Shown: positions 1-64,000, counted from the first letter of the stretch. The stretch is 64,000 nucleotides of DNA from Tubulanus polymorphus (GCF_964204645.1 NW_027437460.1:1-64000); one strand, 5' to 3'. The notes: a model not told the origin generated them from the sequence alone. Translations and numbers: made by a program.

Positions 1-1638
1 ACCCCCTACCCCTAACCCTACCCCTACCCTAACCCTACCCCTACCCCTCACCCACACCCTACCCCTAACCCTAACCCTAACCCTAACCCTAACCCTAACC
101 CTAACCCTAACCCTAACCCTACCCCTAACCCTACCCCAACCCCTAACCCTAACCCTAACCCTAACCCTAACCCTAACCCTACCCTACCCCTAACCCTACC
201 CCTAACCCTAACCCTAACCCTAACCCTAACCCTAACCCTAACCCTAACCCTAACCCTAACCCTAACCCCTAACCCTACCCTACCCAACCCTACCCCTAAC
301 CCTAACCCTAACCCTACCCTAACCCTAACCCTAACCCTAACCCTAACCCTAACCCTAACCCTAACCCTAACCCTAACCCTAACCCTAACCCTAACCCTAA
401 CCCTAACCCTAACCCTAACCCTAACCCTAACCCTAACCCTAACCCTAACCCTAACCCTAACCCTAACCCTAACCCTAACCCTAACCCTAACCCTAACCCT
501 AACCCTAACCCTAACCCTAACCCTAACCCTAACCCTAACCCTAACCCTAACCCTAACCCTAACCCTAACCCTAACCCTAACCCTAACCCTAACCCTAACC
601 CTAACCCTAACCCTAACCCTAACCCTAACCCTAACCCTAACCCTAACCCTAACCCTAACCCTAACCCTAACCCTAACCCTAACCCTAACCCTAACCCTAA
701 CCCTAACCCTAACCCTAACCCTAACCCTAACCCTAACCCTAACCCTAACCCTAACCCTAACCCTAACCCTAACCCTAACCCTAACCCTAACCCTAACCCT
801 AACCCTAACCCTAACCCTAACCCTAACCCTAACCCTAACCCTAACCCTAACCCTAACCCTAACCCTAACCCTAACCCTAACCCTAACCCTAACCCTAACC
901 CTAACCCTAACCCTAACCCTAACCCTAACCCTAACCCTAACCCTAACCCTAACCCTAACCCTAACCCTAACCCTAACCCTAACCCTAACCCTAACCCTAA
1001 CCCTAACCCTAACCCTAACCCTAACCCTAACCCTAACCCTAACCCTAACCCTAACCCTAACCCTAACCCTAACCCTAACCCTAACCCTAACCCTAACCCT
1101 AACCCTAACCCTAACCCTAACCCTAACCCTAACCCTAACCCTAACCCTAACCCTAACCCTAACCCTAACCCTAACCCTAACCCTAACCCTAACCCTAACC
1201 CTAACCCTAACCCTAACCCTAACCCTAACCCTAACCCTAACCCTAACCCTAACCCTAACCCTAACCCTAACCCTAACCCTAACCCTAACCCTAACCCTAA
1301 CCCTAACCCTAACCCTAACCCTAACCCTAACCCTAACCCTAACCCTAACCCTAACCCTAACCCTAACCCTAACCCTAACCCTAACCCTAACCCTAACCCT
1401 AACCCTAACCCTAACCCTAACCCTAACCCTAACCCTAACCCTAACCCTAACCCTAACCCTAACCCTAACCCTAACCCTAACCCTAACCCTAACCCTAACC
1501 CTAACCCTAACCCTAACCCTAACCCTAACCCTAACCCTAACCCTAACCCTAACCCTAACCCTAACCCTAACCCTAACCCTAACCCTAACCCTAACCCTAA
1601 CCCTAACCCTAACCCTAACCCTAACCCTAACCCTAACC
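1..1638 (-). repeat. Telomeric repeat array (CCCTAA)n / (TTAGGG)n, left chromosome end
   Basis: Pure CCCTAA tandem from about 320 to 1638. The first ~320 bp are degenerate (CCCTA, CCCCTAA, CCCA variants). The C-rich strand is on + at the window start, as expected for a left terminus. Confidence 0.99.
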
Positions 1639-2664
1639 ACTTTCAAAGGCCCGCGATTCGAGACAAGTGGCACAGTAGACACCAAAGTCTACTTCAAACC
1701 AACCGATTCGCATCAATTACTACATCGATCCTCGTTTCACCCTAAACACACATTTTCCGGTATAGTTAAAAGTCAAATTCTCCGGTTCCGGCGCATCTGC
1801 AATAACGATTCGGACTTACACGCAGCGACCGGAACCGTCCTTAAAGTACTCAGAGGTCGTGGCTACAAAGACCGCGAACTGCGACACATCAAAAGCCAAG
1901 CTCTACGGCACCACGCCGAACGAGATCTACGAGAACAACAACGGGCCGACGAACCGCCGAAAAAGCGTTTACCGCTTATCTTACCTCACTCCGAAGCCAA
2001 CCGAACCCTAGCCCGTAACATCCGAACCAGATTTACGGAACTGGCTACGGCCACCGGCCGGTCTGACGAGGTAACCACGGTCACCGCCTACACCAAGCAC
2101 AAGAGTCTCAAAGATCTCCTAACTTCGTCGCAGCTCAAACCCACGGAGCCACCCCCTCCCCGAGTCCCCTCTTCACCGCATCGTAACAGAAATACTTCCG
2201 TTGTTTCCAATTCTTCTATTTCCAGGTCTACTCAAAGAACTCCGTCAACCCGACGTCGAGGCACCGAGAAATGCAGAACACCGAGATGTCGTACGTGTCC
2301 ACTCGTCCGAGAAACAACCGTTTGCCGCAGCCACAACAAAATGCACGCGATCCGCAGCACAATTAATTGCGCGACCCGTGAAATTGTATACTGCATCGAA
2401 TGCACCAAGTGCAACATGCTGTACGTCGGCCAAACCGGAATGTCTCTACGAGAACGCGTCACTCATCACGTCTCACGCATCAGAACGAAGAATTCGACTC
2501 CAGTCTCGGACCACTTCAACCAAGTCGACCACACCCGCGAACACTTTCGGGTGTACGGTCTCCAACACCTACCAGGCTCCACGAGACCGATCCGCGAAGC
2601 AGCCGAACAAAACTGGATACGACGACTCGATACGAACACGCCCCGAGGCATGAACGTCCCGTAG
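1639..2664 (+). CDS. Partial PLE polyprotein (341 aa, no start codon): RT C-terminus/thumb, Cys-rich linker, GIY-YIG endonuclease
   Basis: Manual translation of frame +1 shows no stop from 1639 to TAG at 2662-2664. Thumb region: TFKGPRFETSGTVDTKVYFKPTDSHQLLHRSSFHPKHTFSGIVKSQILRFRRICNN...LRGRGY, matching the PLE pattern YxKPT...SxHP...Q..R..RIC...GY. Then AYTKHKSLKDLL, the linker C-x4-C-x2-C-x23-C (2272-2370), and IVYCIECTKCNMLYVGQT...LRER..HH...SDHF...H...REAAEQNWI...GMN (GIY-YIG with R, E, N and CCHH residues). The ORF track shows only the last 107 aa (2341-2664). Confidence 0.93.
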   Translation, partial: TFKGPRFETSGTVDTKVYFKPTDSHQLLHRSSFHPKHTFSGIVKSQILRFRRICNNDSDLHAATGTVLKVLRGRGYKDRELRHIKSQALRHHAERDLREQQRADEPPKKRLPLILPHSEANRTLARNIRTRFTELATATGRSDEVTTVTAYTKHKSLKDLLTSSQLKPTEPPPPRVPSSPHRNRNTSVVSNSSISRSTQRTPSTRRRGTEKCRTPRCRTCPLVRETTVCRSHNKMHAIRSTINCATREIVYCIECTKCNMLYVGQTGMSLRERVTHHVSRIRTKNSTPVSDHFNQVDHTREHFRVYGLQHLPGSTRPIREAAEQNWIRRLDTNTPRGMNVP

Positions 2665-2732
2665 ACCGCCTCACTACAACAATTAACTCTCACTACTTTT
2701 TTACAGGGATAACCCGCTGCCCGTGCACTAGT

Positions 2733-2761
2733 GGGGTCTCCAAACCTTCGGTTTGGTCCCC
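2733..2761 (+). other. Predicted stem-loop in the PLE 3' UTR
   Basis: CCAAACC (2740-2746), TTC loop, GGTTTGG (2750-2756) form a perfect 7-bp stem. It is extended by GGGG (2733-2736) pairing with CCCC (2758-2761). Confidence 0.7.
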
Positions 2762-2798
2762 TAACCTCTATCTCTAAACCTAACCCTAACCCTAACCC
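2758..2798 (+). repeat. Short internal telomeric tract at the PLE 3' end / satellite junction
   Basis: CCCCTAA CCTCTA TCTCTAA ACC followed by (TAACCC)3 at 2781-2798, in the same polarity as the terminal array. Confidence 0.92.
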
Positions 2799-5700
2799 TT
2801 CAACCCATCTACTCGAAATCAGTTCAGTTTACCTTAACCTATCATTTCAGATCGAATCCATCATCTTCAGGAGCAAAAGTAGCTAGAAAATTCTTAATCT
2901 TTCCACCTATCTATTTCAAATCAGTTCAATACGCCAAAAACTATCTTTTCAGATTGAATCCATCATCTTCAGAAGCAAAAGAAGCCAGAAAATTCTGAAT
3001 CTTTCAAACAGTCTATTGAAAATCAGTTCAGTACACCCTAACCCACCAATTAAGATAGAATTCATCATCTTTAGGACCATATTTAGCTAGAAAAATCTGT
3101 ATCTTTCAACCCATCTACTCGAAATCAGTTCAGTTTACCTTAACCTATCATTTCAGATCGAATTCATCATCTTCAGGAGCATTTAGTAGCCAGAAAATTC
3201 TTAATCTTTCCACCTATCTATTTCAAATCAGTTCAATACGCCTAAACCCATCTTTTCAGATTGAATCCATCATCTTCAGAAGCAAAAGAAGCCAGAAAAT
3301 TCTGAATCTTTCAAACAGTCTATTGAAAATCAGTTCAGTACACCCTAACCCACCAATTAAGATAGAATTCATCATCTTTAGGACCATATTTAGCTAGAAA
3401 AATCTGTATCTTTCAACCCATCTACTCGAAATCAGTTCAGTTTACCTTAACCTATCATTTCAGATCGAATTCATCATCTTCAGGAGCATTTAGTAGCCAG
3501 AAAATTCTTAATCTTTCCACCTATCTATTTCAAATCAGTTCAATACGCCTAAACCCATCTTTTCAGATTGAATCCATCATCTTCAGAAGCAAAAGCAGCC
3601 AGAAAATTCTGAATCTTTCAAACAGTCTATTGAAAATCAGTTCAGTACACCCTAACCCACCAATTAAGATAGATTCATCATCTTTAGGACCATATTTAGC
3701 TAGAAAAATCTGTATCTTTCAACCCATCTACTCGAAATCAGTTCAGTTTACCTTAACCTATCATTTCAGATCGAATCCATCATCTTCAGGAGCAAAAGTA
3801 GCTAGAAAATTCTTAATCTTTCCACCTATCTATTTGAAGTCAGTTCAATACGCCTTAACCCATCTTTTCAGATTGAAACCATCATCTTCAGAAGCAAAAG
3901 CAGCCAGAAAATTCTGAATCTTTCAAACAGTCTATTGAAAATCAGTTCAGTACACCCTAACCCACCAATTAAGATAGAATTCATCATCTTTAGGACCATA
4001 TTTAGCTAGAAAAATCTGTATCTTTCAACCCATCCACCAAAAATCAGTTCAGTTTACCTTAACCTATCATTTCAGATCGAATCCATCATCTTCAGGAGCA
4101 AAAGTAGCTAGAAATTTCTTAATCTTTCCACCTATCTATTTGAAGTCAGTTCAATACGCCTTAACCCATCTTTTCAGATTGAAACCATCATCTTCAGAAG
4201 CAAAAGCAGCCAGAAAATTCTGAATCTTTCAAACAGTCTATTGAAAATCAGTTCAGTACACCCTAACCCACCAATTAAGATAGAATTCATCATCTTTAGG
4301 ACCATATTTAGCTAGAAAAATCTGTATCTTTCAACCCATCTACTCGAAATCAGTTTAGTTTACCTTAACCTATCATTTGAGATCGAATCCATCATCTTCA
4401 GGAGCAAAAGTAGCTAGAAAATTCTTAATCTTTCCACCTATCTATTTCAAATCAGTTCAATACGCCTAAACCCATCTTTTCAGATTGAATCCATCATCTT
4501 CAGAAGCAAAAGAAGCCAGAAAATTCTGAATCTTTCAAACAGTCTATTGAAAATCAGTTCAGTACTCCCTAACCCACCAATTAAGATAGAATTCATCATC
4601 TTTAGGACCATATTTAGCTAGAAAAATCTGTATCTTTCAACCCATCTACTCGAAATCAGTTCAGTTTACCTTAACCTATCATTTCAGATCGAATCTATCA
4701 TCTTCAGGAGCAAAAGTAGCTAGAAAATTCTTAATCTTTCCACCTATCTATTTCAAATCAGTTCAATACGCCTTAACCCATCTTTTCAGATTGAAACCAT
4801 CATCTTCAGAAGCAAAAGCAGCCAGAAAATTCTGAATCTTTCAAACAGTCTATTGAAAATCAGTTCAGTACACCCTAACCCACCAATTAAGATAGAATTC
4901 ATCATCTTTAGGACCATATTTAGCTAGAAAAATCTGTATCTTTCAACCCATCTACTCGAAATCAGTTTAGTTTACCTTAACCTATCATTTGAGATCGAAT
5001 CCATCATCTTCAGGAGCATTTAGTAGCCAGAAAATTCTTAATCTTTCCACCTATCTATTTCAAATCAGTTCAATACGCCTAAACCCATCTTTTCAGATTG
5101 AATCCATCATCTTCAGAAGCAAAAGCAGCCAGAAAATTCTGAATCTTTCAAACAGTCTATTGAAAATCAGTTCAGTACACCCTAACCCACCAATTAAGAT
5201 AGAATTCATCATCTTTAGGACCATATTTAGCTAGAAAAATCTGTATCTTTCAACCCATCTACTCGAAATCAGTTCAGTTTACCTTAACCTATCATTTCAG
5301 ATCGAATCTATCATCTTCAGGAGCAAAAGTAGCTAGAAAATTCTTAATCTTTCCACCTATCTATTTCAAATCAGTTCAATACGCCTAAACCCATCTTTTC
5401 AGATTGAAACCATCATCTTCAGAAGCAAAAGCAGCCAGAAAATTCTGAATCTTTCAAACAGTCTATTGAAAATCAGTTCAGTACACCCTAACCCACCAAT
5501 TAAGATAGAATTCATCATCTTTAGGACCATATTTAGCTAGAAAAATCTGTATCTTTCAACCCATCTACTCGAAATCAGTTCAGTTTACCTTAACCTATCA
5601 TTTCAGATCGAATCCATCATCTTCAGGAGCATGTAGTAGCCAGAAAATTCTTAATCTTTCCACCTATCTATTTCAAATCAGTTCAATACGCCTAAACCCA

Positions 5701-8247
5701 TCTTTTCAGATTGAATCCATCATCTTCAGAAGCAAAAGCAGCCAGAAAATCCTGAATCTTTCAAACAGTCTATTGAAAATCAGTTCAGTACACCCTAACC
5801 CACCAATTAAGATAGAATTCATCATCTTTAGGACCATATTTAGCTAGAAAAATCTGTATCTTTCAACCGATCTACTCGAAATCAGTTCACTTTACCTTAA
5901 CCAATCATTTCAGATCGAATCCATCATCTTCAGGAGCAAAAGTAGCTAGAAAATTCTTAATCTTTCCACCTATCTATTTGAAATCAGTTCAATACGCCTA
6001 AACCCATCTTTTCAGATTGAATCCATCATCTTCAGAAGCAAAAGCAGCCAGAAAATTCTGAATCTTTCAAACAGTCTATTGAAAATCAGTTCAGTACTCC
6101 CTAACCCACCAATTAAGATAGATTCATCATCTTTGGGACTATATTTAGCTAGAAAAATCTGTATCTTTCAACCCATCTACTCGAAATCAGTTCAGTATAC
6201 CTTAACCTATCATTTGAGATCGAATCCATCATCTTCAGGAGCAAAAGTAGCTAGAAAATTCTTAATCTTTCCACCTATCTATTTCAAATCAGTTCAATAC
6301 GCCAAAAACTATCTTTTCAGATTGAATCCATCACCTTCAGAAGCAAAAGAAGCCAGAAAATTCTGAATCTTTCAAACAGTCTATTGAAAATCAGTTCAGT
6401 ACACCCTAACCCACCAATTAAGATAGAATTCATCATCTTTAGGACCATATTTAGCTAGAAAAATCTGTATCTTTCAACCCATCTACTCGAAATCAGTTCA
6501 GTTTACCTTAACCTATCATTCCAGATCGAATTCATCATCTTCAGGAGCATTTAGTAGCCAGAAAATTCTTAATCTTTCCACCTATCTATTTCAAATCAGT
6601 TCAATACGCCTAAACCCATCTTTTCAGATTGAATCCATCATCTTCAGAAGCAAAAGCAGCCAGAAAATTCTGAATCTTTCAAACAATCTATTGAAAATCA
6701 GTTCAGTACACCCTAACACACCAATTAAGATAGATTCATCATCTTTAGGACCATATTTAGCTAGAAAAATCTGTATCTTTCAACCCATCTACTCGAAATC
6801 AGTTCAGTTTACCTTAACCTATCATTTCAGATCGAATCCATCATCTTCAGGAGCATTTAGTAGCCAGAAAATTCTTAATCTTTCCACCTATCTATTTCAA
6901 ATCAGTTCAATACGCCTAAACCCATCTTTTCGGATTGAAACCATCATCTTCAGAAGCAAAAGCAGCCAGAAAATTCTGAATCTTTCAAACAGTCTATTGA
7001 AAATCAGTTCAGTACACCCTAACCCACCAATTAAGATAGAATTCATCATCTTTAGGACCATATTTAGCTAGAAAAATCTGTATCTTTCAACCGATCTACT
7101 CGAAATCAGTTCAGTTTACCTTAACCTATCATTTCAGATCGAATCCATCATCTTCAGGAGCAAAAGTAGCTAGAAAATTCTTAATCTTTCCACCTATCTA
7201 TTTGAAGTCAGTTCAATACGCCTTAACCCATCTTTTCAGATTGAAACCATCATCTTCAGAAGCAAAAGCAGCCAGAAAATTCTGAATCTTTCAAACAGTC
7301 TATTGAAAATCAGTTCAGTACACCCTAACCCACCAATTAAGATAGAATTCATCATCTTTAGGACCATATTTAGCTAGAAAAATCTGTATCTTTCAACCCA
7401 TCTACTCGAAATCAGTTCAGTTTACCTTAACCTATCATTTCAGATCGAATCTATCATCATCAGGAGCAAAAGTAGCTAGAAAATTCTTAATCTTTCCACC
7501 TATCTATTTCAAATCAGTTCAATACGCCTAAACCCATCTTTTCAGATTGAAACCACCATCTTCAGAAGCAAAAGCAGCCAGAAAATTCTGAATCTTTCAA
7601 ACAGTCTATTGAAAATCAGTTCAGTACACCCTAACCCACCAATTAAGATAGAATTCATCATCTTTAGGACCATATTTAGCTAGAAAAATCTGTATCTTTC
7701 AACCAATCTACTCGAAATCAGTTCAGTTTACCTTAACCTATCATTTCAGATCGAATCTATCATCTTCAGGAGCAAAAGTAGCTAGAAAATTCTTAATCTT
7801 TCCACCTATCTATTTCAAATCAGTTCAATACGCCTAAACCCATCTTTTCAGATTGAAACCACCATCTTCAGAAGCAAAAGCAGCCAGAAAATTCTGAATC
7901 TTTCAAACAGTCTATTGAAAATCAGTTCAGTACACCCTAACCCACCAATTAAGATAGAATTCATCATCTTTAGGACCATATTTAGCTAGAAAAATCTGTA
8001 TCTTTCAACCGATCTACTCGAAATCAGTTCACTTTACCTTAACCAATCATTTCAGATCGAATCCATCATCTTCAGGAGCAAAAGTAGCCAGAAAATTCTT
8101 AATCTTTCCACCTATCTATTTGAAATCAGTTCAATACGCCTAAACCCATCTTTTCAGATTGAATCCATCATCTTCAGAAGCAAAAGCAGCCAGAAAATTC
8201 TGAATCTTTCAAACAGTCTATTGAAAATCAGTTCAGTACTCCCTAAC
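2799..8247. repeat. Subtelomeric satellite, 306-bp monomer (3 x 102-bp subunits A-B-C), distal block of about 18 monomers
   Basis: Subunits start ATCTTTCAACCCATC (A), ATCTTTCCACCTATC (B) and ATCTTTCAAACAGTC (C). Each counts 102 bp and shares AAATCAGTTCA and CATCATCTT at the same offsets. Monomers are 305-307 bp. The block begins a few bases into subunit A. Confidence 0.98.
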
Positions 8248-8366
8248 CACGACGGTACGAGTAAAGGCAAATGCGACCATGTCGAACGTTATGACGTAGC
8301 GCGTCTCTATTGGTTAAATTGATTTTTGCGCTAAAAATAGCTTCGCGGTTGAGCGCGCGTGTTGAA
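8248..8366 (+). repeat. Left TIR plus degenerate subterminal inverted repeat
   Basis: Motifs GCGACCATG (8273), GTTATGACGT (8288), CTAAAAATA (8331), CGCGGT (8344) and CGCGTGTTGAA (8356) are mirrored in order at the right end. Confidence 0.75.
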
Positions 8367-9823
8367 TGAATACGGAACGGCACCCGGAGTAATGTCACGT
8401 TTTAAGGTATTAAGTATTTGGGATTCGAACCGAAGCATATCTAAAATGAAAATATACGTGTTTTAGCGTTTAGCTATGTTCCAGTTTTCTCAACTTTCGC
8501 CATATTAATTTCCCAGGGCGGCGCTGAAAACCAGGAAGTAATTTTGTCATTTTGCCGGTTTTGGGCCTCCGAAATCTCAAAGTTTTGGAAGAATTTAAGG
8601 TAGAATAGACAGTTCAGTCATCCAAATACCCAATAGTATTAAAACCCATCTAAAAACGAATCGAATGATACCTTATATGTCTATATGGCATTGGAAATAA
8701 GTGAGATATTCCCAGTTTCTCGTACTACTTCAAAACTAATTTTATGAGCTTGCGTTTTTACCTTATTAATTTTGATGACTTTTACTCGAATATAATTGGG
8801 TTCATTCGAAATCTGAAAACATACGTAATTAGATCTTGTTCTCCTGTCAATTTTGATATATAGAATGTGTACTCCCTATTACGAGTTGACTTAGAATTTG
8901 CGTCATCAAGTTAGGCCTAATCGTAAACTGCGGACCAAATTCGAAAATTATTGTAATTGGACTAGTGCCACAGTCTATAAAACACATACTGAGACTTATT
9001 GAATCCTGAAATGAAGGACTGTTATGAGAATAATCATTTGGCATAAGGAAATATTGAATTCGTTGCGTAATATGCCTAAACTAGGATTTTCCACGAGAAT
9101 GGTGTAAAAGCGCAGGCGTTACCTCAATTTTGGCTCTGACACAGAAATTTGTGTGCAGGTCTTCGGGTGGTGGGGCCATTTTTGTAGGGGATTTCCCTGA
9201 AAATTCTGACTAATTACAGCGCAGTCACAGTGAAAATTGATTAATACAGACTCGAAAATGTGTGTCTGTCCTGTCCAACAGTGCCGCACCCTTGTTGTGG
9301 AAACGGCTAAAGGGAAATAAATTTGATTGATCTGTTTCTCGTGGAAAACCAGCCTATGGCTCATTTTCACGCATCTCACATCTAATGTCGAATTCAGTTT
9401 TGTTTGAAAGGATATCAGGTTGTCTAGCTCAGTTAGTGTTTAGCGTAGGCCTACTAGGGACCTATGTATATTGTATTGGAAGATTGCCAAAAATCTTTGA
9501 ATTGTAAATTTTATTTTAAAGATAATATATTTTTTGTTTTATAGGATTCGTCAGTTATTTGTCAGACATAGCAGATATTTTATAACCGATGTTTCCCATT
9601 CAAATGTAAGTTGTATCAAGCAGAAATTTGCAATTTTTTCATATTTATTTGTTCATAACATAATATTGACATTTGTTTATTTCAGGTAGATGGCAAGTAG
9701 CGTGCATTTGGTTCTGATGGTACCCATGGAATTCAGCAGTTGGCCTTCCATATCATATCAATAAATTTTACAAATTAGTAACCGCAATTGCTCAAATAGC
9801 TTGTTGCATTCAAAGCTTCTGTC

Positions 9824-10343
9824 TCATTGTTTTAGGTTTGAAATAAAAGATTGATGTACTTTCAATTTGCTTCTTTTTCTGACTGCGATATATATTACCA
9901 CGTCTACAGCTCGTTGAACCCGCGTTTCAAAGTATGCGGGTTCATATAAACCCAGCGTTTGCAGGGCTGCATCTACACTTAATTTAGCTCCAGTAACTGA
10001 ATCCACATCTGTAGAGTTTTTCGTGAACATAGGTTCAATTCTCAATAGGTTATATAACTCCTTTTTCAAAAACCTGGCTTTTTGCATTCAACCCGTATTT
10101 CGAGCTTAGTGTAGACGCATAACCTCGGTATAAGATGCAAGTGTAGAAGAAGCTTCTCTTATTTTCTTCTGTTAGTAGGAATGAATAGGAATTCACGACT
10201 TCAGGAATACGCATATGAAAAAGCTCTTTTATATGTTTAGATTTATTCAAACATCTAAGTGAAAAGATGGAAACAAGTAAAATCTTGACAATCCCCAGTT
10301 TTAAGATTCAACTTCATGTCCTTGTACTTGATATCTGCATCAC
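9824..10343 (-). pseudogene. Possible decayed coding exon inside the transposon (product unidentified)
   Basis: A strong acceptor (TTTTTGTTTGCTTTTATTCATCTTTAG|G at 10344/10343) precedes two overlapping open frames (10050-10304 and 9824-10087) that a frameshift near 10060-10075 would join. No recognisable domain. Confidence 0.25.
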
Positions 10344-10793
10344 CTAAAGATGAATAAAAGCAAACAAAAAATTCAATTGATTGCTGAAAGTTAAATGATT
10401 CAATACAGCAGCGATGACTACAGATGATGTATTTACCATTCAGTCAGTGAGGCCTACTCACTTTTTATCATCTCCAATCCTGTAAACCTGGCTTTTCTAG
10501 TCACAAGTTGACCTCTAAATTAGCATTGTTCGGGTTCCTGTAACAGGCTGAACTCTCTGAAAAAAAACATTGCCTTTGAAATAAAAAAAATTGCATGTGG
10601 AAATTTATTTCAAGACTTCATAGTTATGTAAATAAATGTCATGAATAGCCTACCTTCTTACGACTCTAAGAGGCCTAGGCCTACTTTTCGGGTCCATGGA
10701 AAAATCATTCACTAGTAGATAGGTGGTCTGTCAAAAATGTTTCCTAAAAATAAGATAAGTAGCAGTGAGTACACTACCTACAAGTTCACTCAA

Positions 10794-10809
10794 CCCCCCC
10801 CCCCCCCCC
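10794..10809. repeat. Poly-C tract (C16)
   Basis: 16 consecutive C. Confidence 0.9.
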
Positions 10810-11245
10810 AGTAGATTGTTTGATGAGAACCTAATCTAAAGTATCGCTTGTCCATGTTTTTGTAGACTACATTAAAGTGTGGATGGAGTAGACACTTGAA
10901 GATAATTAGACACCGTAGAATTGAGTGCAGGACACTTACATTTGTTTCGTTTATTCTTCTCGTTAGGACCTTGGCTGCTTCGGGAATCAGGTTCCGATTC
11001 GATGCGACAGAAGAGTAGTAGTACTGTAGGCCTGTGTACCATGGCATGACCGAGTACCGACAGCTGATATTTTATCGGTCGTAGCGCACTATTTTATCAT
11101 GATCCATAGCCATATTCCAACCTTGGTGCCTTGAGTGCGGTACAGTTATTCTTTTAAACGGACTTGGGCCATTTGTGATGTGAAATACTATATTTTATAC
11201 CAGATCCAGTCAGTTAAAGAAAATTCTCCGTCTTGTTTATCATGA

Positions 11246-11259
11246 CGGCCGCCATTTTG
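11246..11259 (-). promoter_or_regulatory. YY1-type motif, possible inward-facing promoter element of the transposon
   Basis: The minus strand reads CAAAATGGCGGCCG, the YY1 consensus. A CCAAT box (ACCAATCA) lies at 11283-11290. Confidence 0.4.
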
Positions 11260-11420
11260 ACTAGCGGTAATTGATGATTGACACCAATCAAATTTTTAAA
11301 ACTAATCTTCCAGCGATGTTGCTTTCAATTAATTTTATGTTTTATATGTTAATTATAGTCTTTAAATGGATTCTTTTATAAATATTATTTAAAATACATC
11401 GCAGAATAGATTTTAGATCC

Positions 11421-11555
11421 TTCAACGCGCGTATCGCGAGACCGCGCGGTGTTGTTTATTTAGAGTATTATGACGTCATAACAACATTCGCGCACCTAGA
11501 AAGTTCACGTGTTTGGTGTCAAGGTCGCTGAAAGTTGCGGCTCTGTACCTTCGTG
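11421..11555 (-). repeat. Right TIR plus degenerate subterminal inverted repeat
   Basis: TTCAACGCGCG (11421), ACCGCG (11441), TATTTAG (11457), ACGTCATAAC (11473), CAAGGTCGC (11520) and TIR GTACCTTCGTG (11545) are reverse-complement counterparts of the left-end motifs. Confidence 0.75.
11468..11481. promoter_or_regulatory. 14-bp perfect palindrome containing a consensus CRE/ATF site
   Basis: TTATGACGTCATAA, with core TGACGTCA. A partial counterpart, GTTATGACGT, lies at 8288-8297. Function is not demonstrated. Confidence 0.5.
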
Positions 11556-14500
11556 TAACCCACCAATTAAGATAGATTCATCATCTTTGGGACTATATTT
11601 AGCTAGAAAAATCTGTATCTTTCAACCCATCTACTCGAAATCAGTTCAGTATACCTTAACCTATCATTTAAGATCGAATCCATCATCTTCAGGAGCAAAA
11701 GTAGCTAGAAAATTCTTAATCTTTCCACCTATCTATTTCAAATCAGTTCAATACGCCAAAAACTATCTTTTCAGATTGAATCCATCACCTTCAGAAGCAA
11801 AAGAAGCCAGAAAATTCTGAATCTTTCAAACAGTCTATTGAAAATCAGTTCAGTACACCCTAACCCACCAATTAAGATAGAATTCATCATCTTTAGGACC
11901 ATATTTAGCTAGAAAAATCTGTATCTTTCAACCCATCTACTCGAAATCAGTTCAGTTTACCTTAACCTATCATTTCAGATCGAATTCATCATCTTCAGGA
12001 GCATTTAGTAGCCAGAAAATTCTTAATCTTTCCACCTATCTATTTCAAATCAGTTCAATACGCCTAAACCCATCTTTTCAGATTGAATCCATCATCTTCA
12101 GAAGCAAAAGCAGCCAGAAAATCCTGAATCTTTCAAACAGTCTATTGAAAATCAGTTCAGTACACCCTAACCCACCAATTAAGATAGAATTCATCATCTT
12201 TAGGACCATATTTAGCTAGAAAAATCTGTATCTTTCAACCGATCTACTCGAAATCAGTTCACTTTACCTTAACCAATCATTTCAGATCGAATCCATCATC
12301 TTCAGGAGCAAAAGTAGCTAGAAAATTCTTAATCTTTCCACCTATCTATTTGAAATCAGTTCAATACGCCTAAACCCATCTTTTCAGATTGAATCCATCA
12401 TCTTCAGAAGCAAAAGCAGCCAGAAAATTCTGAATCTTTCAAACAGTCTATTGAAAATCAGTTCAGTACACCCTAACCCACCAATTAAGATAGAATTCAT
12501 CATCTTTAGGACCATATTTAGCTAGAAAAATCTGTATCTTTCAACCGATCTACTCGAAATCAGTTCAATTTACCTTAACCAATCATTTCAGATCGAATCC
12601 ATCATCTTCAGGAGCAAAAGTAGCTAGAAAATTCTTAATCTTTCCACCTATCTATTTGAAATCAGTTCAATACGCCTAAACCCATCTTTTCAGATTGAAT
12701 CCATCATCTTCAGAAGCAAAAGCAGCCAGAAAATTCTGAATCTTTCAAACAGTCTATTGAAAATCAGTTCAGTACACCCTAACCCACCAATTAAGATAGA
12801 TTCATCATCTTTAGGACCATATTTAGCTAGAAAAATCTGTATCTTTCAACCCATCTACTCGAAATCAGTTCAGTTTACCTTAACCTATCATTTGAGATCG
12901 AATCCATCATCTTCAGGAGCAAAAAGTAGCTAGAAAATTCTTAATCTTTCCACCTATCTATTTCAAATCAGTTCAATACGCCTAAACCCATCTTTTCAGA
13001 TTGAAAGCATCATCTTCAGAAGCAAAAGCAGCCAGAAAATTCTGAATCTTTCAAACAGTCTATTGAAAATCAGTTCAGTACACCCTAACCCACCAATTAA
13101 GATAGAATTCATCATCTTTAGGACCATATTTAGCTAGAAAAATCTGTATCTTTCAACCCATCTACTCGAAATCAGTTCAGATTACCTTAACCTATCATTT
13201 GAGATCGAATCCATCATCTTCAGGAGCAAAAGTAGCTAGAAAATTCTTAATCTTTCCACCTATCTATTTCAAATCAGTTCAATACGCCAAAAACTATCTT
13301 TTCAGATTGAATCCATCACCTTCAGAAGCAAAAGAAGCCAGAAAATTCTGAATCTTTCAAACAGTCTATTGAAAATCAGTTCAGTACACCCTAACCCACC
13401 AATTAAGATAGAATTCATCATCTTTAGGACCATATTTAGCTAGAAAAATCTGTATCTTTCAACCCATCTACTCGAAATCAGTTCAGTTTACCTTAACCTA
13501 TCATTCCAGATCGAATTCATCATCTTCAGGAGCATTTAGTAGCCAGAAAATTCTTAATCTTTCCACCTATCTATTTCAAATCAGTTCAATACGCCTAAAC
13601 CCATCTTTTCAGATTGAATCCATCATCTTCAGAAGCAAAAGCAGCCAGAAAATTCTGAATCTTTCAAACAGTCTATTGAAAATCAGTTCAGTACACCCTA
13701 ACACACCAATTAAGATAGATTCATCATCTTTAGGACCATATTTAGCTAGAAAAATCTGTATCTTTCAACCCATCTACTCGAAATCAGTTCAGTTTACCTT
13801 AACCTATCATTTCAGATCGAATCCATCATCTTCAGGAGCATTTAGTAGCCAGAAAATTCTTAATCTTTCCACCTATCTATTTCAAATCAGTTCAATACGC
13901 CTAAACCCATCTTTTCGGATTGAAACCATCATCTTCAGAAGCAAAAGCAGCCAGAAAATTCTGAATCTTTCAAACAGTCTATTGAAAATCAGTTCAGTAC
14001 ACCCTAACCCACCAATTAAGATAGAATTCATCATCTTTAGGACCATATTTAGCTAGAAAAATCTGTATCTTTCAACCGATCTACTCGAAATCAGTTCAGT
14101 TTACCTTAACCTATCATTTCAGATCGAATCCATCATCTTCAGGAGCAAAAGTAGCTAGAAAATTCTTAATCTTTCCACCTATCTATTTGAAGTCAGTTCA
14201 ATACGCCTTAACCCATCTTTTCAGATTGAAACCATCATCTTCAGAAGCAAAAGCAGCCAGAAAATTCTGAATCTTTCAAACAGTCTATTGAAAATCAGTT
14301 CAGTACACCCTAACCCACCAATTAAGATAGAATTCATCATCTTTAGGACCATATTTAGCTAGAAAAATCTGTATCTTTCAACCCATCTACTCGAAATCAG
14401 TTTAGTTTACCTTAACCTATCATTTGAGATCGAATCCATCATCTTCAGGAGCATTTAGTAGCCAGAAAATTCTTAATCTTTCCACCTATCTATTTCAAAT

Positions 14501-17500
14501 CAGTTCAATACGCCTAAACCCATCTTTTCAGATTGAATCCATCATCTTCAGAAGCAAAAGCAGCCAGAAAATTCTGAATCTTTCAAACAGTCTATTGAAA
14601 ATCAGTTCAGTACACCCTAACCCACCAATTAAGATAGAATTCATCATCTTTAGGACCATATTTAGCTAGAAAAATCTGTATCTTTCAACCCATCTACTCG
14701 AAATCAGTTCAGTTTACCTTAACCTATCATTTCAGATCGAATCTATCATCTTCAGGAGCAAAAGTAGCTAGAAAATTCTTAATCTTTCCACCTATCTATT
14801 TCAAATCAGTTCAATACGCCTAAACCCATCTTTTCAGATTGAAACCACCATCTTCAGAAGCAAAAGCAGCCAGAAAATTCTGAATCTTTCAAACAGTCTA
14901 TTGAAAATCAGTTCAGTACACCCTAACCCACCAATTAAGATAGAATTCATCATCTTTAGGACCATATTTAGCTAGAAAAATCTGTATCTTTCAACCCATC
15001 TACTCGAAATCAGTTCAGTTTACCTTAACCTATCATTTCAGATCGAATCTATCATCATCAGGAGCAAAAGTAGCTAGAAAATTCTTAATCTTTCCACCTA
15101 TCTATTTCAAATCAGTTCAATACGCCTAAACCCATCTTTTCAGATTGAAACCACCATCTTCAGAAGCAAAAGCAGCCAGAAAATTCTGAATCTTTCAAAC
15201 AGTCTATTGAAAATCAGTTCAGTACACCCTAACCCACCAATTAAGATAGAATTCATCATCTTTAGGACCATATTTAGCTAGAAAAATCTGTATCTTTCAA
15301 CCAATCTACTCGAAATCAGTTCAGTTTACCTTAACCTATCATTTCAGATCGAATCCATCATCTTCAGGAGCATTTAATAGCCAGAAAATTCTTAATCTTT
15401 CCACCTATCTATTTCAAATCAGTTCAATACGCCTAAACCCATCTTTTCAGATTGAATCCACCATCTTCAGAAGCAAAAGCAGCCAGAAAATCCTGAATCT
15501 TTCAAACAGTCTATTGAAAATCAGTTCAGTACACCCTAACCCACCAATTAAGATAGAATTCATCATCTTTAGGACCATATTTAGCTAGAAAAATCTGTAT
15601 CTTTCAACCGATCTACTCGAAATCAGTTCACTTTACCTTAACCAATCATTTCAGATCGAATCCATCATCTTCAGGAGCAAAAGTAGCCAGAAAATTCTTA
15701 ATCTTTCCACCTATCTATTTGAAATCAGTTCAATACGCCTAAACCCATCTTTTCAGATTGAATCCATCATCTTCAGAAGCAAAAGCAGCCAGAAAATTCT
15801 GAATCTTTCAAACAGTCTATTGAAAATCAGTTCAGTACTCCCTAACCCACCAATTAAGATAGATTCATCATCTTTGGGACTATATTTAGCTAGAAAAATC
15901 TGTATCTTTCAACCCATCTACTCGAAATCAGTTCAGTATACCTTAACCTATCATTTGAGATCGAATCCATCATCTTCAGGAGCAAAAGTAGCTAGAAAAT
16001 TCTTAATCTTTCCACCTATCTATTTCAAATCAGTTCAATACGCCTAAACCCATCTTTTCAGATTGAATCCATCATCTTCAGAAGCAAAAGCAGCCAGAAA
16101 ATTCTGAATCTTTCAAACAGTCTATTGAAAATCAGTTCAGTACACCCTAACCCACCAATTAAGATAGAATTCATCATCTTTAGGACCATATTTAGCTAGA
16201 AAAATCTGTATCTTTCAACCGATCTACTCGAAATCAGTTCAATTTACCTTAACCAATCATTTCAGATCGAATCCATCATCTTCAGGAGCAAAAGTAGCTA
16301 GAAAATTCTTAATCTTTCCACCTATCTATTTGAAATCAGTTCAATACGCCTAAACCCATCTTTTCAGATTGAATCCATCATCTTCAGAAGCAAAAGCAGC
16401 CAGAAAATTCTGAATCTTTCAAACAGTCTATTGAAAATCAGTTCAGTACACCCTAACCCACCAATTAAGATAGATTCATCATCTTTAGGACCATATTTAG
16501 CTAGAAAAATCTGTATCTTTCAACCCATCTACTCGAAATCAGTTCAGTTTACCTTAACCTATCATTTGAGATCGAATCCATCATCTTCAGGAGCAAAAAG
16601 TAGCTAGAAAATTCTTAATCTTTCCACCTATCTATTTCAAATCAGTTCAATACGCCTAAACCCATCTTTTCAGATTGAAAGCATCATCTTCAGAAGCAAA
16701 AGCAGCCAGAAAATTCTGAATCTTTCAAACAGTCTATTGAAAATCAGTTCAGTACACCCTAACCCACCAATTAAGATAGAATTCATCATCTTTAGGACCA
16801 TATTTAGCTAGAAAAATCTGTATCTTTCAACCCATCTACTCCAAATCAGTTCAGATTGAAAATCAGTTCAGTACACCCTAACCCACCAATTAAGATAGAA
16901 TTCATCATCTTTAGGACCATATTTAGCTAGAAAAATCTGTATCTTTCAACCAATCTACTCGAAATCAGTTCAGTTTACCTTAACCTATCATTTCAGATCG
17001 AATCCATCATCTTCAGGAGCATTTAGTAGCCAGAAAATTCTTAATCTTTCCACCTATCTATTTCAAATCAGTTCAATACGCCTAAACCCATCTTTTCAGA
17101 TTGAATCCACCATCTTCAGAAGCAAAAGCAGCCAGAAAATCCTGAATCTTTCAAACAGTCTATTGAAAATCAGTTCAGTACACCCTAACCCACCAATTAA
17201 GATAGAATTCATCATCTTTAGGACCATATTTAGCTAGAAAAATCTGTATCTTTCAACCGATATACTCGAAATCAGTTCAATTTACCTTAACCAATCATTT
17301 CAGATCGAATCCATCATCTTCAGGAGCAAAAGTAGCTAGAAAATTCTTAATCTTTCCACCTATCTATTTGAAATCAGTTCAATACGCCTAAACCCATCTT
17401 TTCAGATTGAATCCATCATCTTCAGAAGCAAAAGCAGCCAGAAAATTCTGAATCTTTCAAACAGTCTATTGAAAATCAGTTCAGTACACCCTAACCCACC

Positions 17501-62500: not shown

Positions 62501-64000
62501 ATCTACTCGAAATCAGTTCAGTTTACCTTAACCTATCATTTCAGATCGAATCCATCCTCTTCAGGAGCAAAAAGTAGCTAGAAAATTCTTAATCTTTCCA
62601 CCTATCTATTTCAAAGCAGTTCAATACGCCTAAACCCATCTTTTCAGATTGAAAGCATCATCTTCAGAAGCAAAAGCAGCCAGAAAATTCTGAATCTTTC
62701 AAACAGTCTATTGAAAATCAGTTCAGTACACCCTAACCCACCAATTAAGATAGATTCATCATCTTTAGGACCATATTTAGCTAGAAAAATCTGTATCTTT
62801 CAACCCATCTACTCGAAATCAGTTCAGTTTACCTTAACCTATCATTTCAGATCGAATCCATCATCTTCAGGAGCAAAAAGTAGCTAGAAAATTCTTAATC
62901 TTTCCACCTATCTATTTCAAATCAGTTCAATACGCCTAAACCCATCTTTTCAGATTGAATCCATCATCTTCAGAAGCAAAAGCAGCCAGAAAATTCTGAA
63001 TCTTTCAAACAGTCTATTGAAAATCAGTTCAGTACACCCAAACCCACCAATTAAGATAGAATTCATCATCTTTAGGACCATATTTAGCTAGAAAAATCTG
63101 TATCTTTCAACCGATCTACTCGAAATCAGTTCAGTTTACCTTAACCTATCATTTCAGATCGAATCCATCATCTTCAGAAGCAAAAGCAGCCAGAAAATTC
63201 TGAATCTTTCAAACAGTCTATTGAAAATCAGTTCAGTACTCCCTAACCCACCAATTAAGATAGAATTCATCATCTTTAGGACCATATTTAGCTAGAAAAA
63301 TCTGTATCTTTCAACCCATCTACTCGAAATCAGTTCAGTTTACCTTAACCTATCATTTCAGATCGAATTCATCATCTTCAGGAGCATTTAGTAGCCAGAA
63401 AATTCTTAATCTTTCCACCTATCTATTTCAAATCAGTTCAATACGCCTAAACCCATCTTTTCAGATTGAATCCATCATCTTCAGAAGCAAAAGCAGCCAG
63501 AAAATTCTGAATCTTTCAAACAGTCTATTGAAAATCAGTTCAGTACTCCCTAACCCACCAATTAAGATAGAATTCATCATCTTTAGGACCATATTTAGCT
63601 AGAAAAATCTGTATCTTTCAACCCATCTACTCGAAATCAGTTCAGTTTACCTTAACCTATCATTTCAGATCGAATTCATCATCTTCAGGAGCATTTAGTA
63701 GCCAGAAAATTCTTAATCTTTCCACCTATCTATTTCAAATCAGTTCAATACGCCTAAACCCATCTTTTCAGATTGAATCCATCATCTTCAGAAGCAAAAG
63801 AAGCCAGAAAATTCTGAATCTTTCAAACAGTCTATTGAAAATCAGTTCAGTACAACCTAACCCACCAATTAAGATAGAATTCATCATCTTTAGGACCATA
63901 TTTAGCTAGAAAAATCTGTATCTTTCAACCCATCTACTCGAAATCAGTTTAGTTTACCTTAACCTAGCATTTGAGATCGAATCCATCATCTTTAGGAGCA
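11556..64000. repeat. Subtelomeric 306-bp satellite, proximal block of about 171 monomers, running off the window end
   Basis: Same A-B-C monomer, head-to-tail in a single orientation, resuming in register after the TSD. Only SNPs, 1-bp indels and a few subunit-level rearrangements are seen. Confidence 0.99.

What the first reader, a model, noticed from the sequence alone, without database searches (positions are those of the whole stretch)
1600..2810. Endonuclease-bearing Penelope-like retroelement forming the chromosome terminus (candidate telomere-healing or telomere-targeting retroelement system)
Seen: the order is telomere | 5'-truncated PLE | short CCCTAA tract | broken satellite. The element's sense strand is the telomeric C-strand, and its 3' end points to the centromere. 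Established: this polarity, with 3' reverse-complement telomeric repeats and a telomere-capped 5' truncation, is how endonuclease-deficient Athena/Coprina PLEs and Terminons attach to exposed G-rich 3' ends. PLE RTs are the closest retroelement relatives of telomerase. Unusual: this copy keeps a GIY-YIG with its catalytic residues, plus a Neptune-type Cys linker. Inference: either the RNA's CCCUAA tail annealed to an eroded or broken end and primed RT there, with telomerase recapping afterwards, or the endonuclease nicks TTAGGG repeats specifically. Either way it would be a retroelement acting at telomeres alongside telomerase. Telomere-repeat-associated EN+ PLEs have some precedent (MjPLE01 in kuruma shrimp), so novelty needs checking.
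Basis: partly seen in the sequence, partly recalled or inferred. Interest (0 to 1): 0.9.

Follow-up and report, generated by a model that had tools for sequence, protein, structure and literature searches.

The report
Endonuclease-bearing Penelope element stacked on telomeres
A young retrotransposon family of a ribbon worm keeps its own DNA-cutting enzyme, yet stacks head to tail on chromosome ends in one fixed direction. Each copy ends in telomere-type repeats, a habit so far described only for relatives that lack the enzyme.

Summary
Window 1-1638 is (CCCTAA)273. Positions 1639-2664 are an unbroken 341-codon 3' remnant of a Penelope-like element (PLE) with a CX4CxxC linker and an intact GIY-YIG domain. 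The 3' UTR follows (2665-2778), then 20 nt of CCCTAA-type tail (2779-2798), then a 306-bp satellite to 64000.

It is one dead, 5'-truncated copy of a very young family (99-100% identical, about 92-97 copies assembled). The full element is 6354 bp: ORF1 with a LINE-type SGNH esterase, and ORF2 with RT plus endonuclease. No hammerhead ribozyme was found.

About 55 of 92 3' ends sit in head-to-tail arrays at contig ends. At 6 of 6 resolved ends the 3' end points to the centromere. The other 37 or so copies are interior and carry only 8-10 nt of tail, against 13 nt or more (mode 20) at ends.

A 61%-identical relative that is absent from this genome has the same ORFs, 3' stem-loop and telomeric tail. 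Two more distant relatives also end in telomeric repeats.

The telomere-attaching reading is supported. Whether the endonuclease takes part is unresolved, and reads could not test the junctions. The MjPLE01 precedent is misquoted: it lacks the endonuclease.

First-stage notes of this scan describe the same system on other contigs of this genome.

The parts
1..1638 (+). Terminal telomere tract, C-strand (CCCTAA)n on the + strand. The first ~300 bases hold variant repeats. The last 5 bases (TAACC, 1634-1638) are shared with the element (junction microhomology).
1639..2664 (+). 5'-truncated ORF2 remnant (341 codons plus stop), corresponding to unit positions 5208-6233 of the 6354-bp full-length element. 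It holds the RT thumb/linker region and the endonuclease. The RT core and ORF1 are absent.
2272..2298 (+). CX4CxxC Zn-finger-like linker (CRTPRCRTC), the Neptune/Nematis-type motif upstream of the endonuclease.
   Evidence: motif definition from PMC8557442
2383..2631 (+). GIY-YIG endonuclease domain. It has two Cys between GIY and YIG, and the Arg, Glu and Asn positions are conserved with relatives.
2665..2778 (+). 3' UTR with a conserved 3' module. The box CCCGCTGCCCGTGCACTAGTGGGG lies at 2713-2736. A GGGG...CCCC-closed stem-loop lies at 2733-2761 (7-bp stem CCAAACC/GGTTTGG with a UUCG loop, 2740-2756). The stretch TAACCTCTATCTCTAAA follows at 2762-2778. No hammerhead ribozyme.
2779..2798 (+). 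3' tail CCTAACCCTAACCCTAACCC (3.3 C-strand telomeric repeats), the modal tail length of the family at chromosome ends.
2799..64000 (+). Subtelomeric 306-bp satellite (3 x 102 bp; each subunit holds one telomere-like motif in C-strand orientation). The array is entered at TTCAACCC and is interrupted by a 3.3-kb non-satellite insert at about 8250-11550. This is the context and target of the element, not part of it.

Best explanation
The window holds the innermost and only copy, at this chromosome end, of a recently active autonomous Penelope-like retroelement. The host is probably the nemertean Tubulanus polymorphus, judged from the best protein hit.

SHOWN: The full element is 6354 bp. It has a 2.2-kb 5' UTR, an ORF1 of 523 aa with a C-terminal SGNH esterase like that of CR1/L2-type LINE ORF1 proteins, and an ORF2 of 766 aa (RT, then a CX4CxxC linker, then GIY-YIG). 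Its 3' end is a conserved box, a stem-loop, and at least CCTAACC(C).

INFERRED mechanism: The C-strand-type 3' end of the RNA pairs with a G-strand 3'-OH at a chromosome end. That end may be an eroded telomere with a short repeat seed, or a break in the telomere-like subtelomeric satellite. The RT copies the RNA from there, and synthesis often stops early, which gives the 5' truncation. The new cDNA end is then capped, either by telomerase or by a jump to the tail of another RNA. Repetition, plus unequal exchange, builds polarised head-to-tail arrays.

The same family also enters interior sites, presumably by endonuclease-nicked target-primed reverse transcription, and there it leaves a shorter tail. 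Here the element was primed at or within about 20 nt of the satellite, stopped at unit position about 5203, and was capped with about 1.6 kb of telomere.
For: Family and anatomy: 47 matches at 99-100% identity. A 40-mer from the endonuclease region occurs 97 times and a 3'-end 38-mer 92 times, with reversed-pattern controls at 0. The esterase blocks GDS, G, GxN and DxxH are invariant in 5 relatives, and the best PDB hit is 4c1b_A 'ORF1-encoded protein', E=6.4e-5.

Terminal arrays: all copies in the arrays are intact at the 3' end. There are at least 13 different 5' truncation points (1277, 1399, 1770, 2205, 2207, 3288, 4428, 5203, 5720, 5767, 6253, 6289, 6321).

Polarity: in the 40 loci read, every 3' end is followed by C-strand repeats and never by G-strand repeats. 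The polarity is as predicted at 6 of 6 ends: C43, C10, C8 and C4 on the left with the + strand; C7 and C32 on the right with the - strand. Telomere tracts were located.

Enrichment: on the large contigs, 21 of 58 3' ends lie within 75 kb of an end, which is 0.7% of the sequence.

End priming rather than insertion deep in a telomere: the innermost copies on C43, C34 and C4 meet the satellite after only 20-22 nt of repeat, although present telomeres are 1.3-1.6 kb. The C34 and C4 junctions lie on telomere-like motifs of the satellite. Overall, 12 of 25 non-redundant linkers are 18-22 nt. Every 5' junction shows 1-5 nt of microhomology with the repeat.

Conservation: L042 (61% identical protein, at best 69% nucleotide identity to this genome, so from another genome) has the esterase ORF1, RT-EN, the same box, a stem-loop of different sequence, and a (CCTAAC)n tail. 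L051 and L043 (41% and 39%) also end in C-strand telomeric repeats.

Telomerase: a TERT RNA-binding domain is present at C5:22.80 Mb, over the cut-off.

Copy number: an independent sample gives about 100-150 copies, and depth rises toward the 3' end.
Against: No read spans the junctions, because the reads tool skipped the repeats. No RNA run holds the element, so neither expression nor the true RNA 3' end is known.

About 40% of copies are interior, so the element is not a dedicated telomeric element.

The endonuclease is conserved in all telomere-tailed relatives, which argues that it is used, possibly at telomeres too.

Repeated identical truncated units within arrays (C65 x4, C10 x3-4, C34 x3, C4 x8) show that much of the array length comes from duplication or unequal exchange, not from separate retrotranspositions. 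The arrays on small contigs (C30, C34, C54, C63, C65, C66) are not anchored to a telomere.

The sharp 20-nt mode is unexplained, since tandem junctions keep 7 nt and interior copies 8-10 nt. One endonuclease fragment 7.5 kb from the start of C6 has the opposite polarity.

Contig lengths are known only for C4, C10, C34 and C65. 'Interior' therefore rests on the contigs being numbered by size.
Confidence: 0.6

Rival explanations
1. Endonuclease-dependent, telomere-repeat-specific insertion, in the manner of TRAS/SART in silkworm. The GIY-YIG domain, guided by the Cys linker, nicks the G-strand inside double-stranded TTAGGG repeats. The nick primes reverse transcription on the C-strand-type RNA tail. 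Terminal arrays then arise because telomeres are the largest target.
For: The endonuclease and its catalytic positions are conserved across telomere-tailed lineages at 39-61% identity. The CX2-5CxxC linker has been proposed to direct Neptune elements to microsatellites (PMC8557442). Relatives end in other microsatellites, (ATGT)n and AAT-rich, so a tail and target switch to the telomeric hexamer is a small step. Interior copies at C2:16.497 Mb and at C3:16.025 and 16.172 Mb sit in degenerate telomere-like arrays in C-strand orientation. The C7 copy has 233 nt of perfect repeat on its proximal side, and other copies have 49-98 nt.
Against: Insertion at random depth in 1.3-1.6 kb telomeres should leave proximal tracts of many lengths. 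Instead the median is 21 nt, and three innermost copies touch the satellite after 20-22 nt. Most interior copies (about 32 of 36) are followed by fewer than 13 nt of telomeric repeat, so the endonuclease is not restricted to repeat arrays. No biochemical data exist.
Confidence: 0.25
2. The element is a passive passenger. Ordinary dispersed or satellite-embedded PLE tandem arrays happen to lie in subtelomeres. Breaks inside them are healed by telomerase, and recombination (unequal exchange, break-induced replication) spreads the arrays between ends. The element has no affinity for chromosome ends.
For: PLEs in general form tandem and partial-tandem arrays (PMC8557442). Identical truncated units are repeated within arrays, and every full-length copy is preceded by another copy's 3' end with the same 7-nt junction (27 of 27). 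The same 306-bp satellite flanks several arrays, as expected if subtelomeres exchange sequence.
Against: Random breakage would cap 3'-truncated and antisense copies as often as 5'-truncated sense ones. Yet all junctions read are 5' truncations in one polarity. The C-strand tail follows each 3' end whatever lies beyond it: satellite, the element's own body at 13 or more different points, a SINE, other PLE families, or unrelated DNA. The tail and the 3' module are conserved in a relative from another genome.
Confidence: 0.08
3. Assembly artefact: the telomere, the PLE fragment and the satellite were joined wrongly in a small, repeat-rich, unplaced contig.
For: C43 is a small contig made almost wholly of repeats. 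The reads tool could not test the junctions. The first 300 bases show noisy repeats typical of read ends.
Against: The same architecture recurs on chromosome-scale contigs. C10 has a telomere at 1-1323 and then the element. C7, C8 and C32 have telomere tracts distal to copies of the right polarity. The window copy carries three private substitutions and an in-frame body, so it is a distinct locus. The 5-nt junction microhomology is what telomere addition produces.
Confidence: 0.05

Closest known systems
Athena / Terminons (bdelloid rotifers) and Coprina (fungi, protists): endonuclease-deficient telomere-associated PLEs
   Same: They share the 3' end with short reverse-complement telomeric repeats next to a structured RNA element, and 5' truncations capped by telomeric repeats. 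They also share head-to-tail arrays at chromosome ends with the 3' end toward the centromere, and an accessory GDSL/SGNH esterase, as in Terminons (PMC6431247; PMC8557442).
   Different: Those elements lack an RT-fused endonuclease and carry a hammerhead ribozyme beside the repeats. Here a C-terminal GIY-YIG domain is fused to the RT and is conserved. No hammerhead is detectable (Rfam, E up to 1); a plain stem-loop stands in its place. About 40% of copies are interior. The element measures 6.35 kb, whereas Terminons reach 40 kb.
Neptune-type EN+ PLEs
   Same: The order is RT, then a CX2-5CxxC linker, then a C-terminal GIY-YIG with Cys residues between GIY and YIG. Full-length copies are preceded by a partial copy (pseudo-LTR), and inverted 5' fragments occur. 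The 3' ends associate with microsatellites (PMC8557442).
   Different: Canonical EN+ PLEs are described with a single ORF, hammerhead motifs and dispersed insertion. This family has a separate esterase ORF1, no hammerhead, the telomeric hexamer as its 3' repeat, and polarised terminal arrays. Clade membership was not tested against named reference sequences.
   Same: Neptune-like RT lineage linked with chromosome-end biology.
   Different: Craig et al. 2021 list it as an element that lost its endonuclease (EN-), so it is not an EN+ precedent. The original paper is not in the library and was not read.
TRAS/SART (Bombyx) and HeT-A/TART/TAHRE (Drosophila): telomere-specialised non-LTR elements
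   Same: Retrotransposons that occupy telomeres in one orientation. In Bombyx they act beside telomerase-type repeats. They have two ORFs, and the ORF1 esterase here resembles that of CR1/L2-type LINEs (PDB 4c1b).
   Different: The RT class differs (LINE against PLE), and so does the nuclease (APE-type, or none, against GIY-YIG). No sequence relationship beyond the esterase fold.
GIY-YIG PLEs bounded by telomere-like repeats in lake sturgeon (PMC12031113)
   Same: EN+ PLE remnants directly flanked by telomere-like repeats.
   Different: This was reported as incidental context of an integrated herpesvirus. No tail, polarity or array analysis was made, and the relationship to this family is unknown.

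Membership tests
Penelope-like elements (PLE) | PLE-type reverse transcriptase | tested here: met
   The full-length ORF2 hits RVT_1 (E=1.1e-7). 3325 homologues have E<=1e-10, and the 120 listed nearly all carry the combination DUF8422 + HTH_animal + GIY-YIG. The window copy itself keeps only the part after the RT core.
Penelope-like elements (PLE) | [quoted passage not shown] | tested here: met
   PF01541, E=4.9e-5. The core IVYCIECTKCNMLYVGQT has Cys between the motifs, and His residues follow downstream.
Penelope-like elements (PLE) | Pseudo-LTR / partial tandem architecture | tested here: met
   All 27 occurrences of the unit's 5' end are preceded by another copy's 3' end, with upstream fragments of 66, 102 and 635 bp or full length. 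An inverted 92-bp fragment lies at the C10 end.
Penelope-like elements (PLE) | Hammerhead ribozyme in the terminal repeat (canonical PLEs) | tested here: not met
   No Rfam match at E up to 1 in 10 kb that covers more than one full unit. This feature is not universal: Naiad and Chlamys elements also lack it (PMC8557442).
Neptune clade of EN+ PLEs | CX2-5CxxC Zn-finger-like linker between RT and a C-terminal EN | tested here: met
   CRTPRCRTC at nt 2272-2298. It is shared with P0002, P0035 and P0012 but absent from P0091, P0106, P0100 and P0088. The motif is also found in Nematis and Naiad.
Neptune clade of EN+ PLEs | Placement inside the clade in an RT phylogeny with named references | not testable with these tools
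   No named Neptune, Nematis, Poseidon, Hydra, Athena or Coprina sequences could be brought in by reference. The tree holds only unnamed database homologues.
Athena/Coprina-type telomere-attaching PLEs | Reverse-complement telomeric repeats at the 3' end, and 5' truncations capped by telomeric repeats, at chromosome ends | tested here: met
   At least 33 3' ends have 13 nt or more of C-strand repeat. Polarity is as predicted at 6 of 6 ends.
Athena/Coprina-type telomere-attaching PLEs | Absence of an endonuclease domain | tested here: not met
   An intact GIY-YIG is fused to the RT in the family and in its telomere-tailed relatives. The family works like these elements at chromosome ends but is not a member.
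Athena/Coprina-type telomere-attaching PLEs | Restriction to chromosome termini | tested here: not met
   About 37 of 92 3' ends lie megabases inside large contigs.
SGNH/GDSL esterase ORF1 (as in CR1/L2 LINE ORF1p and Terminon accessory ORFs) | Blocks I, II, III and V with the Ser, Gly, Asn, Asp and His residues | tested here: met
   G43, S45, N46, G66, G94 and N96 are invariant, and a D..IHW block is present, in 5 sequences. The profile hits PDB 4c1b_A at E=6.4e-5 and GDSL lipases more weakly. Pfam on the single sequence is only E=0.05.

The most novel reading that the evidence does not exclude
This PLE lineage has two modes of entry and serves as a back-up end-healing system beside telomerase. 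Its RNA ends in a telomerase-template-like CCUAACCC, presented by a conserved stem-loop. On free or barely seeded G-strand ends, the RT primes without the endonuclease and may copy the short template reiteratively, which would give the sharp 20-nt tail. At interior sites the GIY-YIG nick is used and only 8-10 nt of tail remain. That would make it a living intermediate between EN+ transposing PLEs and EN- telomere-attached PLEs, the closest retroelement relatives of telomerase. It also comes with its own tRNA-headed SINE passenger.
Probability: 0.3. Interest if true: 0.9.

Novelty: new variant of a known kind. Interest (0 to 1): 0.75.

Why it matters
PLE reverse transcriptases are the sister group of telomerase. 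The field divides them cleanly: endonuclease-bearing elements that transpose inside chromosomes, and endonuclease-less elements that attach to chromosome ends (PMC8557442).

A young family that does both breaks that division. It also offers natural material for asking how telomere attachment arose and whether loss of the endonuclease follows it or precedes it. It has a fused, conserved GIY-YIG, a telomere-complementary 3' end conserved across genomes, polarised terminal arrays on telomerase-type TTAGGG telomeres, and a non-autonomous tRNA-headed partner.

It also shows that chromosome ends of an animal with ordinary telomerase repeats can be built partly from retroelements. This matters for reading subtelomeres in new telomere-to-telomere assemblies.

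No description of such an EN+ telomere-tailed PLE was found in six full-text searches. Subscription papers, including the 2007 Athena paper and the 2017 Terminon paper, could not be read.

Tried and rejected
1. Read-level test of the junctions. Read laying on 1580-3110 with four runs skipped 1580-1646 and 2763-2806 as repeats, so it gave no junction evidence. It did give copy number and the private substitutions. The tool called these stretches repeats, not human-like.

2. RNA evidence. No listed run is RNA and holds the element, and the one guessed RNA run laid nothing. Expression is unknown.

3. Fetching interior copies. I did not try to read flanks by other means. Interior copies were classed only by exact hypothesis patterns, so their flanks beyond 8-13 nt are unknown, except for C2:16.497 Mb and C3:16.172 Mb.

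4. Hammerhead or other known RNA family in the element: none.

5. A tRNA in the passenger element by ARAGORN: none. Rfam does find it.

6. Phylogeny with named PLE clades: not possible, because no reference sequences are available by reference. The quick tree of unnamed homologues is a short search, and only 11 of its 39 rows had their 3' ends examined, so its count of gains is not meaningful.

7. Look-up of the 96%-identical annotated protein (P0001): records of the window's own genome are withheld.

8. Rejected idea: that the 20-nt tail is simply encoded by master copies. Tandem full-length junctions keep only 7 nt.

9. Rejected idea: that the interior degenerate telomere-like satellite explains all interior copies. 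It abuts only the C2 and C3 copies, and perhaps lies near C6:11.27 Mb.

Full report
OBSERVATION

The window starts with (CCCTAA)273 at 4-1638. From 1639 one frame stays open for 341 codons, to a stop at 2662-2664, while the other two frames are broken. The product carries a GIY-YIG domain (PF01541, E=4.9e-5). A CX4CxxC motif (CRTPRCRTC, nt 2272-2298) lies upstream of it. A 114-nt 3' UTR follows, then CCTAACCCTAACCCTAACCC (2779-2798), then a 306-bp satellite that fills the rest of the window. The sense strand is the telomeric C-strand, and the 3' end faces inward.

THE FAMILY

The 1160 bases are one copy of a family whose members are 99-100% identical. A 40-mer from the endonuclease region occurs 97 times. 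A 38-mer at the 3' end occurs 92 times. Reversed-pattern controls give none. Raw reads of an independent sample give about 750-1100x depth at about 7.2x genome coverage, so roughly 100-150 copies, and depth rises toward the 3' end.

A natural full-length unit (L031:409-6762, from contig C4) measures 6354 bp. It has a 2.2-kb leader, an ORF1 of 523 aa and an ORF2 of 766 aa with RT and GIY-YIG.

The C-terminus of ORF1 is an SGNH esterase. The GDS, G, GxN and DxxH blocks are invariant in five relatives. A profile of them finds PDB 4c1b_A, deposited as 'ORF1-encoded protein', at E=6.4e-5, ahead of GDSL lipases. From my own knowledge, 4c1b is the esterase of a zebrafish L2-type LINE ORF1 protein.

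Rfam finds no hammerhead or any other family in 10 kb of the array. The best protein hit (96%) is annotated in Tubulanus polymorphus. The genome is therefore probably that nemertean, which is an inference. A TERT RNA-binding domain is present on C5.

The window copy starts at unit position about 5203. It lacks ORF1 and the RT core and carries three private substitutions. It is a dead remnant.

DISTRIBUTION AND POLARITY

Of the 92 3' ends, 55 lie in head-to-tail arrays. There are 12 within 71 kb of the start of C4, 6 within 36 kb of the start of C10, one at 12.8 kb on C8 and 2 at the right end of C7. The other 34 are on small unplaced contigs.

Telomere tracts were found at the start of C10 (1-1323) and at C8:4-1552. 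They were also found at C7:21571497-21572584 and C32:105332-106748.

At all six ends that can be judged, the copies point their 3' ends to the centromere: C43, C10, C8 and C4 on the left, C7 and C32 on the right. On the large contigs, 21 of 58 3' ends lie within 75 kb of an end, which is about 0.7% of the sequence. The remaining 37 or so are megabases inside contigs. Calling them interior assumes the contigs are numbered by size, since only four contig lengths were shown.

JUNCTIONS

In the 40 loci I could read, every copy in an array is intact at its 3' end and truncated at its 5' end, at 13 or more different points. Every 3' end is followed by C-strand repeats and never by G-strand repeats.

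What follows the repeats varies. It can be the satellite, the element's own body, a tRNA-headed SINE, two other PLE families, or unrelated DNA. The linker lengths of 25 non-redundant junctions have a median of 21 nt. Twelve of them lie at 18-22 nt, and a tail of the distribution reaches 233 nt. Each 5' junction shares 1-5 nt with the repeat; in the window this is TAACC.

All 27 copies that reach unit position 1 are preceded by another copy's 3' end, with the constant junction CCTAACC|TTAGCCC. This is the pseudo-LTR architecture of PLEs. The outermost copy on C10 also has the typical inverted fragment. Identical truncated units repeated within arrays show that duplication or unequal exchange has added to array length.

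TWO TAIL CLASSES

Exact-pattern counts show 69 sites where the 3' end is followed by CCTAACCC. Of these, 41 continue with TAA and 33 with TAACC. Copies in terminal arrays almost all have 13 nt or more (29 against 2). Interior copies almost all have 8-10 nt (4 against about 32). Fisher's test gives p=2e-12, with the caveat that segmental duplicates make the copies non-independent.

The interior copies whose flanks I could read sit in a degenerate telomere-like array, in C-strand orientation (C2:16.497 Mb and C3:16.172 Mb; the same array also lies beside the C3:16.025 Mb copy). That array occurs mid-chromosome on most large contigs.

CONSERVATION

The nearest relative (P0002, 61% identity, contig L042 from another sequencing run) matches this genome at no more than 69% nucleotide identity, so it comes from another genome. 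It has the esterase ORF1 and RT-EN, the same 3' box, a GGGG...CCCC-closed stem-loop of different sequence, a nearly identical CCCCTAACC..CTCTAAA stretch, and then (CCTAAC)n.

Two more distant relatives also end in C-strand telomeric repeats: L051 at 41%, flanked by such repeats on both sides, and L043 at 39%. One (L049/L050) has a degenerate version. Others end in (ATGT)n or AAT-rich repeats, or in nothing recognisable.

A quick tree puts this element with P0002 (100% support), apart from the other telomere-tailed group. Only 11 rows had their ends examined, so nothing firm follows about the number of origins. The GIY-YIG positions are conserved in all of them.

A 335-bp element shares the 3' module. 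It has a true tRNA-like head (Rfam, 43 bits) and stands in 26 tandem copies at the start of C65. It is a non-autonomous passenger.

MECHANISM

The shown facts are the fixed polarity, the C-strand 3' end, the capped 5' truncations, the microhomologies, the enrichment at ends, and the conservation of both the tail and the endonuclease.

The mechanism is inferred. The RNA's C-strand-type end pairs with a G-strand 3'-OH at a chromosome end, and the RT extends from there. The truncated cDNA end is then capped, either by telomerase or by a jump to another RNA.

The main argument against insertion deep inside telomeres comes from three independent innermost copies (C43, C34, C4). They meet the satellite after only 20-22 nt, although present telomeres are 1.3-1.6 kb long. 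The C34 and C4 junctions fall on telomere-like motifs of the satellite. The C7 copy, with 233 nt of repeat on its proximal side, shows that longer seeds are also used.

The conserved endonuclease and the many interior copies show that nick-primed insertion is part of the life cycle too. Whether the endonuclease also acts at telomeres is open. The sharp 20-nt mode is unexplained, since tandem junctions keep only 7 nt and interior copies 8-10 nt. It could be an RNA-templated tail, reiterative copying of a short template-like end, or a preference for barely seeded ends.

COMPARISON AND NOVELTY

At chromosome ends the family behaves like Athena/Terminons and Coprina. It fails two of their defining features, namely having no endonuclease and being restricted to termini, and it has a stem-loop where they have a hammerhead (PMC6431247, PMC8557442). 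In protein architecture it is a Neptune-type EN+ PLE, but with a separate LINE-like esterase ORF1 and no hammerhead. Clade membership could not be tested against named references.

A sturgeon study mentions GIY-YIG PLEs bounded by telomere-like repeats but does not analyse them. Six full-text searches found no description of an EN+ PLE with a telomeric tail and terminal arrays. The 2007 Athena and 2017 Terminon papers are not held. I rate it a new variant of a known kind.

First-stage notes of this scan describe the same system on other contigs of this genome. They are unverified. They agree with what I tested and did not shape my reading.

LIMITS

- There is no read-level junction proof and no RNA data.
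- Interior flanks are largely unread, and contig lengths are mostly unknown.
- Copy counts are inflated by duplication.
- The tree is a quick one.

Noticed in passing
L039:1-8816 (C65:1-8816); also L004:2661-2800 and L020:2662-2860: A 335-bp non-autonomous element with a true tRNA-like head (Rfam tRNA, 43 bits) and the PLE's 3' box and CCCCTAACC..CTCTAAACCTAACCCC end. It stands in 26 tandem copies and as single or truncated copies inside the terminal arrays. It looks like a SINE mobilised by the PLE.
   Followed up: partly
window 8250-11550: A 3.3-kb non-satellite insert interrupts the 306-bp satellite. It has no ORF of 90 aa or more, and its GC skew near zero is unlike the satellite's.
   Followed up: no
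window 2799-64000; also L008, L013, L015, L036: The 306-bp subtelomeric satellite is made of three 102-bp subunits. Each holds one telomere-like motif (CCTTAACCT, CCTAAACCC, CCCTAACCC) in C-strand orientation. The same satellite lies proximal to the PLE arrays on C4, C7 and C34.
   Followed up: partly
L009:2660-4130 and L029:2650-4156 (C3:16.172 Mb, C2:16.497 Mb): A ~1.5-kb degenerate telomere-like array (CCCTAACCCTCTAAACACTAAA type) that recurs mid-chromosome on most large contigs. It may be a pericentromeric satellite or a relic of chromosome fusion.
   Followed up: partly
L033:7817-10000 and L034:1-376 (C4:47.8-60.4 kb); L025 reverse strand 2654-3440 (C30 end): Two further PLE families lie inside the terminal arrays in the same polarity. 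One has a related esterase ORF1 and is capped by 98 nt of telomeric repeat. The other is a 5'-truncated GIY-YIG element that ends in a (CCTAACTCCTAAA)-like array. At L034:377 a family-1 copy starting at the ORF1 ATG is joined, with no linker, to the middle of the other family's esterase.
   Followed up: no
L012:2660-2755 (C66:15.35 kb); L023:2700-2990 (C8:12.9 kb): Variant terminal repeats lie proximal to PLE copies: (CCCCCTAA)n and (TTCATTAACCCTAACCCTAA)n.
   Followed up: no
window 2484 and 2622 (loose ends of raw reads, run X5): Reads of an independent sample join the element's 5' leader directly to the endonuclease region. These are internally deleted derivatives, not present in the loci held.
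   Followed up: no
L046-L048, L044/L045, L054-L057 (marine metagenome contigs): Two-ORF PLEs with a GDSL-type esterase ORF1 and RT-GIY-YIG are common in ocean metagenomes. The box GCC(A/C)GTGCA is kept in the 3' UTRs of L054-L057 and L059, and of L042.
   Followed up: partly
G000:C6:7540-7579 (minus strand): An endonuclease-region 40-mer lies 7.5 kb from a contig start in the opposite polarity and without the 3' anchor. It is the only apparent exception to the polarity rule, and may be an inverted fragment like the one on C10.
   Followed up: no
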